The translations under genes and the position numbers were made by a program. Positions 45,851 through 60,598 of a DNA stretch of 64,000 nt are shown here, piece after piece. Positions within the stretch are counted from its first letter, which is position 1, and every line of letters starts with the position of its first letter. Location of the stretch: positions 28,334,001 to 28,398,000 of the forward strand of contig NC_047021.1 in the NCBI RefSeq assembly GCF_902652985.1. Reading direction: 5' to 3'. The notes beneath the pieces are model-generated. The model was not told the DNA's origin. It saw nothing but the letters and a program-made list of their open reading frames with translations, and made no database searches. Origin of the DNA: Pecten maximus. Its lineage: Eukaryota.

Positions 45851-46335
45851 GGCCACTTTCCAATTCAGCGCCACCTGGCGGATCATAATCCAAGATGGCG
45901 GCGTATGGTGTGTCCGTGTCACAGCACATGTTTTTAGTGTTTTATCAGCGCTACGCGTCAAATTAGACTTTTTCCAGAAAATCTTCGTGCTTAAATGCGT
46001 ATATAGGTAAGTAAGTCTTTATTTTGGAATGATTTTATAAGGAAATAAGGCGATATAAGACCGATATACACTTGTTCAAATACCCCAGGTGAGAAACCCT
46101 GCAGAATGCTATGTAACTCATTTACACAGGTGTAGCATTAAAAATCGGTCATTGTATGATTCACGATTCATTTATTAGTTCTTGATTTGTATAGATCGAA
46201 TAGAATCAGTCACTGCTTATGAAATGACGGCATCATAACGATGATAGCGAAATAAATAACGATATATCCATAAATACTATTTGCACCAGGTAACATTACA
46301 GGTAAGTTTGAAAGGTGTTTTGAATGCCGCCATTT
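45851..46335 (+). repeat. Left TIR (485 bp)
   Basis: GGCCACTTTCCAATTCAGCGCCACC...GAATGCCGCCATTT; looser similarity to the right end continues about 40 bp further inward. Confidence 0.95.
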
Positions 46336-46533
46336 AGCCTATACTATTTTTAGAGCAGGTGAAGTCACGTGATCTATCTAGGATAGTGATCTTCCATTGA
46401 TTCATTGTATTTTCTATTTCATGTCACCTGACATTCGTATTTAAATAAATATTACAAAAAGTACTGGTATAGGCCTAGTGGTTTAAAAACATATTATGAA
46501 AACAAACTTTGATTTATATTTTTCAGATACAAA

Positions 46534-48027
46534 ATGCCTCATCACTGCTGTGTGCCACATTGTACAAATAATTCCAAGACAAAAGATGGTTACTCTTTTC
46601 ATACATTCCCTAAAGACCCTTCAGTGGCAAAAAAGTGGGTGATTGCTATACGCAGAGATCAAGGTGCAGATTTTGATATCAACAAAGAGACAAGAGTATG
46701 CTCCGTTCACTTTAACGCAGACTCTTACCATCCTACCACTGCTATTCATGTTCGAAAACGTTTGCGAGGGACTGCTGTACCATCAGTATTTCAATGGACT
46801 GTACAGAAACCCGTCAGAAGGAAACTCAGCCTTCTCATGAAAAGTCCAAATTGTGGAAATGTAGAATCCAACAATACAAGTTTCCCAGAAAAACATGTTT
46901 TGGAAAGCTGTAATAATGATTGTGATGAGCCTTTGCTTGTAGACCAGCCTTTTAGTAGTGAGGATAGTTTAACAAATGTGGATTGGGCTGAATCTCCAGA
47001 CAAGAGTAAATTAAAAGAAACCAACAGTGTTCTACTTCACATTAGGAACAAAGAGAAGTTTTCAATTCTACGGTTTTGTAATTCCGATTCTGATATCAGA
47101 TATTACACAGGATTTTCATCATACCTAGCCTTACACTGTTTCTTCACATTCTTACAACCGGCTTGTAGCTTTTTGTACTATGTAGGGACAGACAACACAT
47201 CTGAAGGGACACCTTACATATTTCTCAACAAACGTGGAAAGTCCAGATCCTTGTCGCCTATGGAAGAGTTATTTGTAACTCTTGTTCGTCTTCGGAAAGG
47301 TTTACCAGAAAAACATTTAGGTGACCTGTATAACCTTTCTGAGGGACATGTGTCAAAAATACTCAACACTTGGATTGCTTTTCTTGACAACAGACTGTCT
47401 TCGCTACCAATTTGGCCACAAAGAGATCATGTGAATAACACCATGCCAGCAATTTTCAAGACATATTTTTCCTCTACTCGAACCATAATTGACTGCACAG
47501 AAATATTCATAGAACACCCATCTGCCTCGGAGTGTCAGCGGGAGACATTTTCCTCGTACAAACATCACAACACTGCAAAGGGTCTCATTGCCATCGCACC
47601 AAGTGGCCAAATCACATTTATTTCTCCGCTCTACTCTGGGCGATGTTCAGACAAGAAAATAATTCGCCATTGTGGATTGTTGGACCTGATAGAGGAAGGA
47701 GATGGTGTCATGGTTGATCGCGGCTTTGACATTACAACAGATCTTGAAAACAGGGGTGCTCACCTTATAATGCCTGCCTTTTTAAGTGGAAAAGACCAAT
47801 TCACTCCTGATCAGTTATCTCAATCCAGAGAAATAGCAACAGTGCGCGTCCATGTTGAGAGGGCTGTGAGGAAGATCAAAGAATTTGAAATTCTGAGACA
47901 CACAGTTCCCATCACATTGTGTCCTATGCTTGAAAAGATATGGAATATTTGTGGACATTTGGCTAATTTCTCAGGGAGTGGAACATTGTTTAGACAACCC
48001 AAAGATGTCTCCACTTGTAAAGAATAA
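46534..48027 (+). CDS. THAP-HTH-DDE transposase (Harbinger/ISL2EU DDE_Tnp_4 type), 497 aa, intact
   Basis: THAP (CCVPHC...FP...W...VCSVHF...AVPSVF), HTH (LSPMEELFVTLVRLR...LGDLYNLS...VSKI), catalytic IIDCTE / VDRGF / RVHVERA. A TTTCAG acceptor (AG at 46525-46526) lies just before the ATG. Confidence 0.95.
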   Translation: MPHHCCVPHCTNNSKTKDGYSFHTFPKDPSVAKKWVIAIRRDQGADFDINKETRVCSVHFNADSYHPTTAIHVRKRLRGTAVPSVFQWTVQKPVRRKLSLLMKSPNCGNVESNNTSFPEKHVLESCNNDCDEPLLVDQPFSSEDSLTNVDWAESPDKSKLKETNSVLLHIRNKEKFSILRFCNSDSDIRYYTGFSSYLALHCFFTFLQPACSFLYYVGTDNTSEGTPYIFLNKRGKSRSLSPMEELFVTLVRLRKGLPEKHLGDLYNLSEGHVSKILNTWIAFLDNRLSSLPIWPQRDHVNNTMPAIFKTYFSSTRTIIDCTEIFIEHPSASECQRETFSSYKHHNTAKGLIAIAPSGQITFISPLYSGRCSDKKIIRHCGLLDLIEEGDGVMVDRGFDITTDLENRGAHLIMPAFLSGKDQFTPDQLSQSREIATVRVHVERAVRKIKEFEILRHTVPITLCPMLEKIWNICGHLANFSGSGTLFRQPKDVSTCKE

Positions 48028-57900: not shown

Positions 57901-60113
57901 CAGATAACAATTAACGACTGAATATCAAATTAAGTGAATATCACAAGTATTTTTGCATTTGTTTTTAGATAATCCGGATTTCCGTCTTTAAAAAAAAATA
58001 CCTAGTAGACGTAGTGCATAGTAAACGTAGCCATGTAACAGCTGATTTTAATCAGATATAACTTAACATGAACTTAACACCGTCACAGAAGTTCTTCGCA
58101 ATCGAAAATTTGGTCGTGAATTCGGTATTTTGCAAATTATTTCAAAATACTTTCAGGTAAAAGAAAACAAAAATTCTCGTAAAAATATCGATTTTGGGTC
58201 GACTATCGGCCATTTCGGTAATTCAACTCCAACGACAATCGGGCCGCGATTCGCAAATGAATAATTAATTTAAAATTCGGTCAAATAAACCTCTAATATT
58301 TTATATATGATACAATCAGGCATTGCAGAACATATATTGTGGTCAATCCTCTGAAAATAATGCCAATTTATATTATAATTAAGCCCGATTTTTCTTCGTT
58401 TCGGTATTTCCAAGTCTGCTTCACGTGTGGTCCGTTTCAGTAAATATTCTCGTCTTTGCCGAAATAAAAACAAGCTATATAATTGTTCATTTTAAACATG
58501 ACAACAACTGCCAACCACACGTATCCAAAAATGTTATTGTTGATATCATCTGAATATTGCCGTAGTTATCTGTCACTTCGATTGTACACCCCATGCCAAA
58601 GTGAAAGAAGAATCGACCAATCAAATTGGTTTATTTTTGATTTCCGTAAATCTTGCAGTTACCTCCCTTACAACAGTAAATACGTTCCAAGTATCGCCTA
58701 CAACAAGCAATCCCGTGCACATAGCAAGATATTATCATTTGCATTTGATTTATTGGGTCATTTTCGTCAAAGGAAAATGGTATATGGAAATCGATGACAA
58801 TTTTAACGCTATGACCAGTCACCCTGACCACAAATGCCACCTAATTGTAAGCCTGTACATATGTACAGTTCTTTCTCGCAAACACGTACAGTAACTACAG
58901 TATAGTATGATACAATGTATCGTCTTGTATGCCGTCATTGATATATTTCTTTCTCTAAATTATAGAAATACACACCTAGTTGATAATGATGTAACATTCT
59001 AGAATATATATATTAGACATTTAAGTAAATCGCGGACAAATTTGCAGACCTATGCTATAATGTCAGCCGTTTTGGAAAGAACACAGAAGAGCAAAACTTT
59101 CTAACCATCCGGAGACGCCTGCGCAATAGTTGTTTACATAAATATATTGACCTGGACCGGAGTTATTCGCAAAGTTCAGGTTCATTTAGTCTTTTCATTT
59201 CGCTAGAGTTATGCATTTCTCAAATCGTATGCATCTTGAAAACACCTACTGAATACATTTCAACCTTTTCGGTAAAACTACTATATAAAACGAAGATGTT
59301 TTTGCAAGTAAATTATTTGAAGCGTAAGGCAATGGGGGCAGCCATATTTCATTGAAACAGACAGTAGATGGCGTATTGGTGAATGTGGCTACCATATATG
59401 GTTATATTTCTCAGTCCAGTTCTTGATCACAATAACCGAACATTAATGTTCGTTTAATAAACCATTAAGACTATATGCATGTATTTATTGCATTTTACTG
59501 ACAGAAATCCTATATTATCACTAGTGATGATATAAGATTTTGACTGTACTGCATGGAAGAAATCTGATAAAATCACTAGTCATAATCAAATGTAAGATTT
59601 CTTGAATTCAATGCATTAACATAAAAGATACATTCAATGTGCTTTCAGATGTCTGCAAATGCATTTTAAGTTTAACTGCAAATGCAATAAACAGAAAATT
59701 TAATAATTTCTCGTTTGATATAAAATATATATCACTTGTATTTCAGATTTTATAATTAGATAACACTTGTGCTACACACTCGTGAAAATATAATTTATAA
59801 ATAAATCTGTCATACTCATGAAATATATCTTATATTAAATAGGTAACTCTGAATATCCTCATTGATTCCTATGAGCCATATATATATCAAAATATTCAAA
59901 AGCAGATTTTACCCTGTTCTTAAATAGGCCTAATAAACAACATAACTGAAGATATATATATTTGTCATTATAACATAAAACAGGGCCAAAAACAAAACAT
60001 CAACATGACTGCTAAAAATCTTTTTTTATTTTTGGTTAAAAAAATATTTTCATCATCATGTTTTGTCATTATCAACCTCTTGATGTCACGTGACTCTACC
60101 TGCTCGAAATATA

Positions 60114-60598
60114 AAATGGCGGCATTCAAAACACCTTTCAAACTTACCTGTAATGTTACCTGGTGCAAATAGTATTTATGGATATATCGTTATTTATTTC
60201 GCTATCATCGTTATGATGCCGTCATTTCATAAGCAGTGACTGATTCTATTCGATCTATACAAATCAAGAACTAATAAATGAATCGTGAATCATACAATGA
60301 CCGATTTTTAATGCTACACCTGTGTAAATGAGTTACATAGCATTCTGCAGGGTTTCTCACCTGGGGTATTTGAACAAGTGTATATCGGTCTTATATCGCC
60401 TTATTTCCTTATAAAATCATTCCAAAATAAAGACTTACTTACCTATATACGCATTTAAGCACGAAGATTTTCTGGAAAAAGTCTAATTTGACGCGTAGCG
60501 CTGATAAAACACTAAAAACATGTGCTGTGACACGGACACACCATACGCCGCCATCTTGGATTATGATCCGCCAGGTGGCGCTGAATTGGAAAGTGGCC
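60114..60598 (-). repeat. Right TIR (485 bp)
   Basis: Reverse complement of 45851-46335. Confidence 0.95.

What the first reader, a model, noticed from the sequence alone, without database searches (positions are those of the whole stretch)
45851..60598. Large, apparently intact two-gene transposon coupling a DDE transposase to a PHD-SWIM-lambda-exonuclease protein
Seen: 485-bp TIRs, an AATT flank on both sides, and two uninterrupted convergent ORFs with complete catalytic motifs (D-D-E; E...PD...EIK). Established: a THAP-DDE plus YqaJ gene pair defines ISL2EU elements, and YqaJ belongs to the lambda exonuclease (5'-3' resection) family. To my knowledge its role in these elements is uncharacterised. 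Inference: this may be an active system in which a chromatin-reading exonuclease processes donor or target ends and helps choose insertion sites. The size and TIR length look unusually large for a Harbinger-related element.
Basis: partly seen in the sequence, partly recalled or inferred. Interest (0 to 1): 0.85.

Follow-up and report, generated by a model that had tools for sequence, protein, structure and literature searches.

The report
Scallop ISL2EU transposon swollen by nested repeats
This is one copy of a young, low-copy ISL2EU-type DNA transposon of the king scallop; its true size is 6.45 kb, and it looks 14.7 kb long only because two other repeats have jumped into it, so it is a new family of a known kind, not a new kind of element.

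Summary
There are perfect 485-bp inverted ends (489 nt with the palindromic AATT), AATT on both flanks, and two open convergent genes: a THAP-HTH-DDE transposase and a PHD-SWIM-YqaJ nuclease. The genome is Pecten maximus.

This gene pair, the AATT target and GG-starting ends are the published definition of ISL2EU (PMC4482050).

The 14.7-kb size is not native. Nine other full copies measure 6.37-6.46 kb, apart from one 9.4-kb copy with its own insert. The window copy holds an 8,293-bp insert (51162-59454). That insert is a 3.4-kb high-copy Helitron-like repeat, itself split by a 4.9-kb young repeat. It lies between the nuclease gene and its own end of the element. This copy's nuclease also has a private G411S change at a glycine invariant in 80 relatives.

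The family is young: copies differ by 0-9 bases per 6.45 kb, six copies have both genes open, and two paralogous empty sites prove insertion.

What is new is modest. The TIRs are about twice the longest published. An N-terminal PHF2/BPTF-like PHD finger is seen only in a mollusc clade, while other relatives carry SAP or C-terminal PHD modules. The nuclease's role is still inference. No RNA or population data could be reached.

The scan had already noted other ISL2EU elements in this genome.

The parts
45847..45850 (.). Left copy of the AATT target
   Evidence: All 20 full-length ends in the genome are flanked by AATT. Paralogous empty sites carry a single AATT.
45851..46335 (+). Left terminal inverted repeat, 485 bp, starting GGCCACTTTCC
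   Evidence: 100% complementary to 60114-60598. The outer 150 bp has GC 0.47 and CpG o/e 1.23. It contains an AAGATGGCGGC motif and GT donor-like sites at 46005 and 46300. A promoter/first-exon role is inference only.
46534..48027 (+). ORF1, 497-aa transposase: THAP (46546-46791), HTH_Tnp_4 (47248-47400), DDE_Tnp_4 (47488-47967)
   Evidence: Pfam E = 8e-18, 3e-13 and 6e-41. D320, D395, E442 and THAP C5, C10, C56, H59 are conserved in 30 homologues. Identical to the family majority sequence.
49286..51004 (-). ORF2, 572-aa nuclease: PHD (50804-50941), SWIM CxCx7CxH (50444-50482), YqaJ/lambda-exonuclease domain (49457-49906)
   Evidence: Pfam PHD 5e-10, YqaJ 1.6e-11. The PHD is closest to PHF2/PHF8/BPTF. 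The AF2 model's C-terminal domain matches LHK-Exo and lambda exonuclease, Foldseek E = 5e-9 to 1e-6, TM 0.64-0.72. A 100% match is annotated as LOC117345238 of Pecten maximus.
49772..49774 (-). Private G411S codon in this copy's nuclease, four residues before catalytic E415
   Evidence: Only the window copy has Ser (the base change is at 49774). Gly is invariant in 80 representative relatives.
51162..59454 (.). Nested foreign insert, 8,293 bp, not part of the ISL2EU element (boundary ambiguous by about 4 nt)
   Evidence: Nine other copies align straight across 51161/59455. Both ends belong to a repeat family with about 500 first-look hits and usual copies of about 3.4 kb.
52391..57313 (.). Second-level nested repeat, 4.9 kb, inside the 3.4-kb repeat
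   Evidence: Uninterrupted 3.4-kb copies align across 52390/57314. At least 30 near-full copies are 97-100% identical elsewhere in the genome. It has the same 5' end as the 3.4-kb repeat.
59455..60113 (-). Native subterminal region between ORF2 and the right TIR
   Evidence: Collinear with the canonical copies at 99.7-100%.
60114..60598 (-). Right terminal inverted repeat, 485 bp
60599..60602 (.). Right copy of the AATT target
60603..61042 (.). Host repeat that the element inserted into; its other part is 45777-45846
   Evidence: More than 1,000 first-look hits at about 90% identity. Five paralogues read straight across the site with a single AATT.

Best explanation
The feature is one copy of a young, low-copy ISL2EU (PHIS superfamily) cut-and-paste DNA transposon of Pecten maximus. 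The native element is about 6.45 kb. It has 485-bp perfect TIRs, a THAP-HTH-DDE transposase gene, and a tail-to-tail SWIM-YqaJ (lambda-exonuclease-fold) nuclease gene that in this mollusc lineage has gained an N-terminal PHD finger. It inserts at AATT. The window copy was later hit by a 3.4-kb Helitron-like repeat that now carries a further 4.9-kb repeat. Together these inflate it to 14.7 kb and lie between the nuclease gene and the end of the element it faces. With its private G411S change, this copy is probably not fully autonomous, although its ends could still be mobilised in trans by sister copies.

Mechanism (inferred). The THAP/HTH domains bind the ends and the DDE core cuts and joins at AATT. 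The nuclease resects 5' strands at the double-strand breaks the transposase makes, most likely at the donor gap. That would channel repair into homology-directed copying, so the donor copy is kept. The variable PHD or SAP modules would hold the nuclease on chromatin or DNA. I put the identity and anatomy at about 0.9 and the nuclease role at about 0.35; the confidence given for this field (0.8) is for identity and anatomy weighed with the general cut-and-paste mechanism.
For: Identity: the domains are confirmed, and the DDE and THAP residues are invariant in homologues. The nuclease catalytic E, D and ExK are conserved and the fold matches lambda exonuclease. AATT flanks all 20 ends, and two paralogous empty sites exist. 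The published ISL2EU definition matches: two ORFs (THAP-HTH-DDE plus YqaJ), target A|AT|T, TIRs starting GG, animal hosts (PMC4482050).

Native size and nesting.

Youth: the eight young copies differ by 0-9 substitutions per 6.45 kb and TIRs show 0-3 mismatches. Both ORFs are open in six copies.

Linkage of the two genes in relatives: both proteins occur in Pinctada, Liolophura and Dreissena at matching identity, 68/69, 58/58 and 59/53%. The tail-to-tail pair is kept on metagenome contigs L049 and L052 at 26-28% identity.

Chromatin or DNA tethering: SAP occurs in 14 of 80 and PHD in 8 of 80 relatives. C-terminal PHD occurs in 16 of 148, against N-terminal PHD in the mollusc clade only. This points to independent gains.
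Against: Nothing shown here says what the nuclease acts on. Lambda-type exonucleases usually work with an annealing protein, and none is encoded here. The PHD aromatic cage is only half kept (H21 and E28 replace the two tyrosines of PHF2), so methyl-lysine reading is uncertain. The duplicated length at the target cannot be resolved because AATT is a palindrome. It could be 4 bp, 2 bp with T...A element termini, or 0 bp. The transposase was not placed on a tree with named ISL2EU, Spy and Harbinger references.
Confidence: 0.8

Rival explanations
1. One reading: a natively large (14.7 kb), intact and active element whose 9 kb of extra sequence is cargo or a native interior.
For: Perfect TIRs and two open reading frames.
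Against: Nine other copies lack the 8.3 kb and align straight across the junction. The extra DNA consists of two repeat families with hundreds of independent copies elsewhere. This copy's ORF2 carries G411S at an invariant glycine.
Confidence: 0.03
2. The nuclease is a catalytic subunit of a two-part transposase, like TnsA of Tn7. It would cut or trim the 5' (non-transferred) strands at the element ends while the DDE protein cuts the 3' strands, and so would be needed for excision itself.
For: The nuclease gene is linked to the transposase across very distant relatives and its catalytic residues are conserved. Both TnsA and YqaJ are PD-(D/E)xK nucleases (established knowledge). The sister group Spy lacks ORF2 and differs in target handling (PMC4122938).
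Against: The fold is closest to processive lambda-type exonucleases that need a free end, not to site-specific endonucleases. Spy transposases work alone (PMC11304231). The complex prediction could not be run.
Confidence: 0.2
3. The PHD-SWIM part steers integration: the nuclease protein reads histone marks and recruits the transposase to particular chromatin, so it mainly chooses target sites.
For: The PHD is closest to the H3K4me3 readers PHF2, PHF8 and BPTF. PHD and SAP modules were gained repeatedly in the family.
Against: Two of the four cage positions are changed. Both insertion sites examined are inside other repeats, not obviously promoters. Most family members have no PHD at all yet keep the nuclease. 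Conserved nuclease catalytic residues are not explained by a pure targeting role.
Confidence: 0.12
4. The two genes are host (domesticated) genes that merely sit between chance inverted repeats.
For: NCBI annotates both as ordinary 'uncharacterized protein' loci.
Against: There are ten full copies with identical ends at different loci, AATT flanks everywhere, and paralogous empty sites.
Confidence: 0.01

Closest known systems
[quoted passage not shown] ISL2EU-15_CGi of Crassostrea gigas and IS4EU-1_BF (Han et al. 2015, PMC4482050)
   Same: Two ORFs (a THAP+HTH_Tnp_4+DDE_Tnp_4 transposase and a YqaJ protein), AATT target, TIRs starting GG, animal host, length within the 0.7-7.1 kb range, low to moderate copy number.
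   Different: TIRs of 485 bp against a published range of 6-259 bp. The flank reads AATT-GG rather than A-AT-GG, so either 4 bp are duplicated or the element ends in T...A. ORF2 has an N-terminal PHD finger, and the ISL2EU papers I read do not mention PHD or SWIM domains in it (two-term search).
Spy transposons (sister clade of ISL2EU; PMC4122938)
   Same: Related DDE transposase and insertion into a palindromic A/T motif. A no-duplication reading (AA|TT) of the present ends cannot be excluded.
   Different: Spy has a single ORF, no THAP domain, no YqaJ gene, and targets AAATTT. Here both THAP and the YqaJ gene are present.
PIF/Harbinger elements
   Same: Two-gene DDE_Tnp_4 transposons in which the second protein is needed alongside the transposase (PMC9179366).
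   Different: In Harbinger the second protein is a Myb/SANT DNA binder and the TSD is TWA. Here it is a nuclease and the target is AATT.
Lambda exonuclease / LHK-Exo / YqaJ (phage 5'-3' alkaline exonucleases)
   Same: The fold (Foldseek TM 0.64-0.72 on the target) and the catalytic E...D...ExK residues.
   Different: Fused to SWIM and PHD modules, with no annealing-protein partner gene, carried by a eukaryotic transposon. Activity and oligomeric state are untested.
PHD fingers of PHF2, PHF8 and BPTF (H3K4me3 readers)
   Same: Best sequence matches (E about 1e-13). The zinc ligands and the Met and Trp cage positions are kept.
   Different: The two cage tyrosines are His and Glu here (E/N/D in the other molluscs). 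From memory, a Glu at this position in engineered BPTF shifts preference to lower methylation states. The specificity here is unknown.

Membership tests
ISL2EU (PHIS superfamily) | Transposase with a DDE_Tnp_4 core plus HTH and an N-terminal THAP finger | tested here: met
   Pfam E = 6e-41, 3e-13 and 8e-18. The D320-K349-D373-D395-P414-R438-E442 pattern is conserved in 30 homologues.
ISL2EU (PHIS superfamily) | Second ORF encoding a YqaJ-domain protein | tested here: met
   Pfam YqaJ 1.6e-11. The fold matches lambda exonuclease and LHK-Exo. The gene pair is kept in distant relatives.
ISL2EU (PHIS superfamily) | Target A|AT|T with a 2-bp AT duplication | tested here: inconclusive
   The AATT target is met at 20 of 20 ends and at two paralogous empty sites. 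The duplicated length is 4, 2 or 0 bp depending on where the element is taken to end, and the palindrome prevents a decision. The published example reads A-AT-GG; here it is AATT-GG.
ISL2EU (PHIS superfamily) | TIRs usually begin with GG; published length 6-259 bp | tested here: met
   The TIRs begin GGCC. At 485 bp the length lies outside the published range, but length is descriptive, not defining.
ISL2EU (PHIS superfamily) | Transposase falls in the ISL2EU clade, sister to Spy, on a DDE tree | not tested
   No named Repbase reference sequences were available. Only unnamed homologues were aligned.
Lambda exonuclease / YqaJ PD-(D/E)xK nucleases | Catalytic Glu, Asp and Glu-x-Lys in the conserved fold | tested here: met
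   E415, D449, E462 and K464 are invariant in 80 relatives. Foldseek E = 5e-9 to LHK-Exo. This copy has G411S at a further invariant position.
Lambda exonuclease / YqaJ PD-(D/E)xK nucleases | 5'-3' exonuclease activity on double-stranded ends; toroidal trimer | not testable with these tools
   Needs biochemistry. The complex tool did not fold the job.
PHD-finger methyl-lysine readers (PHF2/PHF8/BPTF type) | C4HC3 zinc ligands plus an aromatic cage for H3K4me3 | tested here: inconclusive
   The ligands and the W43/M34 positions are kept, but the Y7 and Y14 equivalents are H21 and E28. The domain has low confidence in the model (pLDDT 30-57).
SWIM zinc finger | CxCxnCxH motif after a small beta sheet | tested here: met
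   The motif is C175-x-C177-x7-C185-x-H187. It is at least 90% conserved in 148 relatives and the pattern is found in 135 of 148. The model shows four strands then a helix, pLDDT about 80-88. The Pfam score is below threshold, E=0.07.

The most novel reading that the evidence does not exclude
The ISL2EU nuclease is a chromatin-tethered break-processing enzyme. Its SWIM-lambda-exonuclease core has picked up histone- or DNA-binding modules several times independently: an N-terminal PHF2/BPTF-like PHD in molluscs, C-terminal PHD fingers elsewhere, and SAP in others. That would be because holding the nuclease on chromatin at the break decides how donor or target sites are repaired, and so whether the element multiplies. 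This Pecten family, with several near-identical copies that have both genes open, would be a natural system in which to test it.
Probability: 0.3. Interest if true: 0.55.

Novelty: new member of a known kind. Interest (0 to 1): 0.3.

Why it matters
What the second gene of ISL2EU elements does has been an open question since the group was described; PMC4482050 says it is unknown. This scallop family does not answer it, but it offers good material. There are ten copies, most nearly identical, six with both genes open, clear empty sites, and a nuclease with an extra histone-reader-like finger. The survey here shows that PHD or SAP add-ons recur across the SWIM-YqaJ family, which hints that chromatin or DNA tethering matters for the nuclease.

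For genome annotation the practical point is that the 14.7-kb 'giant' is three nested transposons, two of them from young Helitron-like families. Both ISL2EU genes are currently annotated as ordinary uncharacterised scallop proteins.

Tried and rejected
As a result there is no RNA evidence, no read-level test of empty alleles, and read laying was not used.

I could not view the Pinctada, Liolophura or Dreissena loci. Linkage there rests on both proteins sharing the same longest-contig length in the search tables.

It gives no evidence either way on binding.

4. The search for related loci with the 22-sequence alignment failed for lack of conserved stretches. A 6-sequence alignment gave 7 metagenome loci, two of them with the gene pair.

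5. The Pfam scan of all 148 representatives exceeded the size limit, so 80 were scanned.

6. The sigma-70 promoter scan is irrelevant to an animal genome and was ignored.

7. 'Cargo' or 'old decayed interior' for 51056-60113 is rejected, since it is two young nested repeats.

8. A MITE population with these ends is rejected: the terminal 100 bp finds only the 21 known ends.

9. Looking for an assembled empty allele of the window site or the C595 site found only paralogous sites, not allelic ones.

10. The C6 pair (44.55 and 44.57 Mb) is not counted as two insertions. The two copies share flanks in inverted order and have 0 substitutions but 17 one-base indels, which suggests an assembly duplication.
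Full report
**Observation.** The window comes from Pecten maximus. A 100% protein match is named LOC117345238 [Pecten maximus]. The assembly has 918,306,378 bp in 3,983 contigs, and the window is C7:28334001-28398000. The inverted repeat is real: arms 45847-46335 and 60114-60602, 489 nt, 100% complementary. That is a 485-bp TIR beginning GGCCACTTTCC, plus the palindromic AATT on each side. 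Two long ORFs lie tail to tail: 46534-48027 (+, 497 aa) and 49286-51055 (-, 589 aa).

Pfam gives THAP, HTH_Tnp_4 and DDE_Tnp_4 for the first ORF, and PHD plus YqaJ for the second. SWIM is below Pfam's threshold (E=0.07). However, the motif C175-x-C177-x7-C185-x-H187 is at least 90% conserved in 148 relatives. It sits on a four-strand-plus-helix unit in the AlphaFold model.

ORF2 most likely starts at its second Met (51004), giving the 572 aa of the NCBI model. A pyrimidine-rich ...TTACTTATATAG|GT acceptor-like site lies between the first and second ATG.

**Catalytic residues.** In 30 transposase homologues D320, D395 and E442 are invariant. So are K349, D373, P414 and R438, which complete the published PHIS pattern, and the THAP ligands C5, C10, C56 and H59 are conserved (pattern from PMC4122938). 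In the nuclease, E415, D449, E462 and K464 are invariant in 80 cluster representatives. The C-terminal domain of the model (pLDDT about 90) is closest to LHK-Exo and lambda exonuclease, with Foldseek E = 5e-9 to 1e-6 and TM 0.64-0.72 on the target.

**The size is not native.** The TIR finds 21 ends in the genome: ten full copies plus one truncated end on C13. No short derivatives were found. Eight of the other nine full copies are 6,374-6,460 bp. One (C17 15.16 Mb) is 9,373 bp because of its own 3-kb insert. All nine align to the window copy from 45847 to 51161 and resume at 59455. So 51162-59454 (8,293 bp, boundary ambiguous by about 4 nt) is an insertion.

Both ends of that insertion belong to a repeat family with about 500 first-look hits. 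Usual copies of that family are about 3.4 kb and 97-99% identical to this one. Uninterrupted copies align across 52390/57314. So a second repeat of 4.9 kb (52391-57313) sits inside the first. At least 30 near-full copies of it are 97-100% identical elsewhere.

The two repeats share the same 5' end. Each has a short palindrome near its 3' end, no TIR and no clear duplication. I read them as Helitron-like but have not verified this.

The insert lies 158 bp upstream of the ORF2 start, between that gene and the right TIR. If ORF2 is transcribed from that TIR, its leader now has to span an extra 8.3 kb.

**It is a true transposition product.** The window copy landed in a repeat of about 0.5 kb with more than 1,000 first-look hits. 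Five paralogues read ...gattgttgg AATT gttgag... without interruption, whereas the window has AATT[element]AATT. The copy on contig C595 gives a second case: three paralogues read ...cttactta AATT gacttaaa....

**The family is young.** Excluding an older, duplicated pair on C17 (about 0.6% diverged), the eight young copies differ by 0-9 substitutions over 6.45 kb. TIR mismatches within a copy are 0-3. Both ORFs are open in six copies, the window's included.

Independent insertion sites number about nine. The two C6 copies share flanks in inverted order, with 0 substitutions but 17 one-base indels, so they are probably an assembly duplication. The two older C17 copies share flanks as well.

The window copy has four private base changes. 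One of them makes G411S in the nuclease, four residues before catalytic E415, at a glycine invariant in 80 relatives. With the nested insert, this makes the window copy one of the less convincing candidates for autonomy. Its ends are perfect, so it could still be moved in trans.

**Comparison with what is known.** Han et al. 2015 (PMC4482050) define ISL2EU by five features:
- two ORFs, a DDE+HTH+THAP transposase and a YqaJ protein;
- target A|AT|T with an AT duplication;
- TIRs of 6-259 bp, usually starting GG;
- mean autonomous length of about 4.8 kb (listed range 746-7,117 bp);
- animal hosts.

They state that the function of the second ORF is unknown. The Pecten family meets the gene content, the target, the GG start and the host range.

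It differs in three modest ways.
- Its TIRs are 485 bp, about twice the longest listed.
- Its flank reads AATT-GG where the published example reads A-AT-GG. Either 4 bp are duplicated, or the element ends in T...A with the usual 2-bp duplication, or nothing is duplicated, as in the sister group Spy. Because AATT is a palindrome and all 20 flanks carry it, sequence alone cannot decide.
- ORF2 carries an N-terminal PHD finger. The three ISL2EU papers I read do not mention PHD or SWIM in ORF2. A two-term search, ISL2EU with SWIM, returned only two papers, which I did not open. Repbase and Dfam could not be consulted.

**How unusual is the PHD?** A profile of the SWIM-YqaJ part finds 4,295 cluster representatives at E <= 1e-30. 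Of the top 80, Pfam finds SAP in 14 and PHD in 8. By pattern, 16 of 148 carry a PHD-like C4HC3 finger, always after the nuclease domain. The N-terminal finger with a CxC first pair (PHF2/BPTF type) is seen only in Pecten, Pinctada, Dreissena and Liolophura. So the core is SWIM plus nuclease, and chromatin- or DNA-binding modules have been added more than once at either end.

The Pecten finger's best matches are PHF2, PHF8 and BPTF (E about 1e-13). In the PHF2 alignment, the Met and Trp cage positions are kept (M34, W43). The two tyrosines are H21 and E28 here, and E/N/D in the other molluscs. Which residues form the cage is from my memory of the PHF2/PHF8/BPTF structures. Histone reading is therefore plausible but its specificity is open.

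**The two genes travel together.** Both proteins have relatives in the same species at matching identity. Pinctada imbricata is 68% (transposase) and 69% (nuclease), with both listing the same longest-contig length. Liolophura sinensis is 58/58% and Dreissena polymorpha 59/53%. Two metagenome contigs keep the tail-to-tail pair at only 26-28% identity (L049, L052). The scallop genome holds many other YqaJ loci (541 first-look candidates), but the PHD part matches only this family.

**Mechanism.** What is shown: the anatomy, conserved catalytic residues in both proteins, insertion at AATT, recent spread, and persistent linkage of the genes. The rest is inferred.

The THAP and HTH domains would bind the ends, and the DDE core would cut and join. 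The lambda-type nuclease would resect 5' strands at the breaks. I favour the donor gap (about 0.35), where resection would push repair towards copying from the sister chromatid or homologue and so keep the donor copy. The rivals are a TnsA-like role in cutting the second strand (about 0.2) and a mainly targeting role for the PHD-SWIM part (about 0.12).

The outer 150 bp of each TIR has GC 0.47 and CpG o/e 1.23, against 0.40-0.44 in the ORFs. It carries an AAGATGGCGGC motif; its resemblance to a YY1 site is from memory. Donor-like GT sites follow it, and acceptor-like sites lie just before each ATG. Without RNA data it stays a hypothesis.

**Limits.** There is therefore no evidence here on expression, on polymorphism among individuals, or on binding between the two proteins. 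The transposase was not placed on a tree with named references.

**Verdict.** It is a new family of a known kind with a few modest peculiarities. The earlier notes of this scan on other ISL2EU elements in the same genome (s1-792110, s1-792188) show the kind had already been seen on other DNA.

Noticed in passing
window 51162-52390 + 57314-59454, and 52391-57313: Two young non-coding repeat families (about 3.4 kb with about 500 first-look hits; about 4.9 kb with at least 30 near-full copies, one 100% identical on C3283) are nested one in the other. They share the 5' end (A)ATCAAAGTACTG[G/A]AAGTACTGTA. Each has a short palindrome a few nt from its 3' end, no TIR and no clear duplication. They look Helitron-like and recently active.
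   Followed up: partly
window 45777-45846 and 60603-61042: The ISL2EU copy sits inside a repeat of about 0.5 kb with more than 1,000 first-look hits at about 90% identity. The 32-bp palindrome at 60940-60971 noted earlier by the scan is part of this repeat.
   Followed up: partly
G000 C6:44546742-44553190 and C6:44574591-44581029: Two copies of the element 28 kb apart share the same flanks in inverted order. They have 0 substitutions but 17 single-base indels in one copy. This looks like an unpolished assembly duplication rather than two insertions.
   Followed up: partly
G000 C17:15114723-15121096 and C17:15162138-15171510: An older pair of copies (about 0.6% from the young ones, about 0.5% from each other) shares the same flanks in direct order, so it is a segmental duplication that carried the element. 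One of them holds its own insert of about 3 kb, and most of their reading frames are broken (ORF2 of the 15.16-Mb copy still reads 569 aa).
   Followed up: no
window 21866-24205: Long tandem arrays with 54-bp and 53-bp units, in a segment of raised GC (0.435) and strong AT skew (-0.24).
   Followed up: no
window 14045-15273 and 1599-2114: A 155-bp satellite (7 or more units) and a 20-bp minisatellite (about 25 units).
   Followed up: no
proteins P0019-P0028: Some YqaJ-domain relatives carry Pfam PF20700 as well, for example one from the aphid Uroleucon formosanum. I did not look up what PF20700 is.
   Followed up: no
window 46306: One of the four private base changes of the window copy lies in the left TIR, yet this copy's two TIRs are identical, while several sister copies have 1-3 TIR mismatches. 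This may be a change that happened to equalise the arms, or conversion between them.
   Followed up: no
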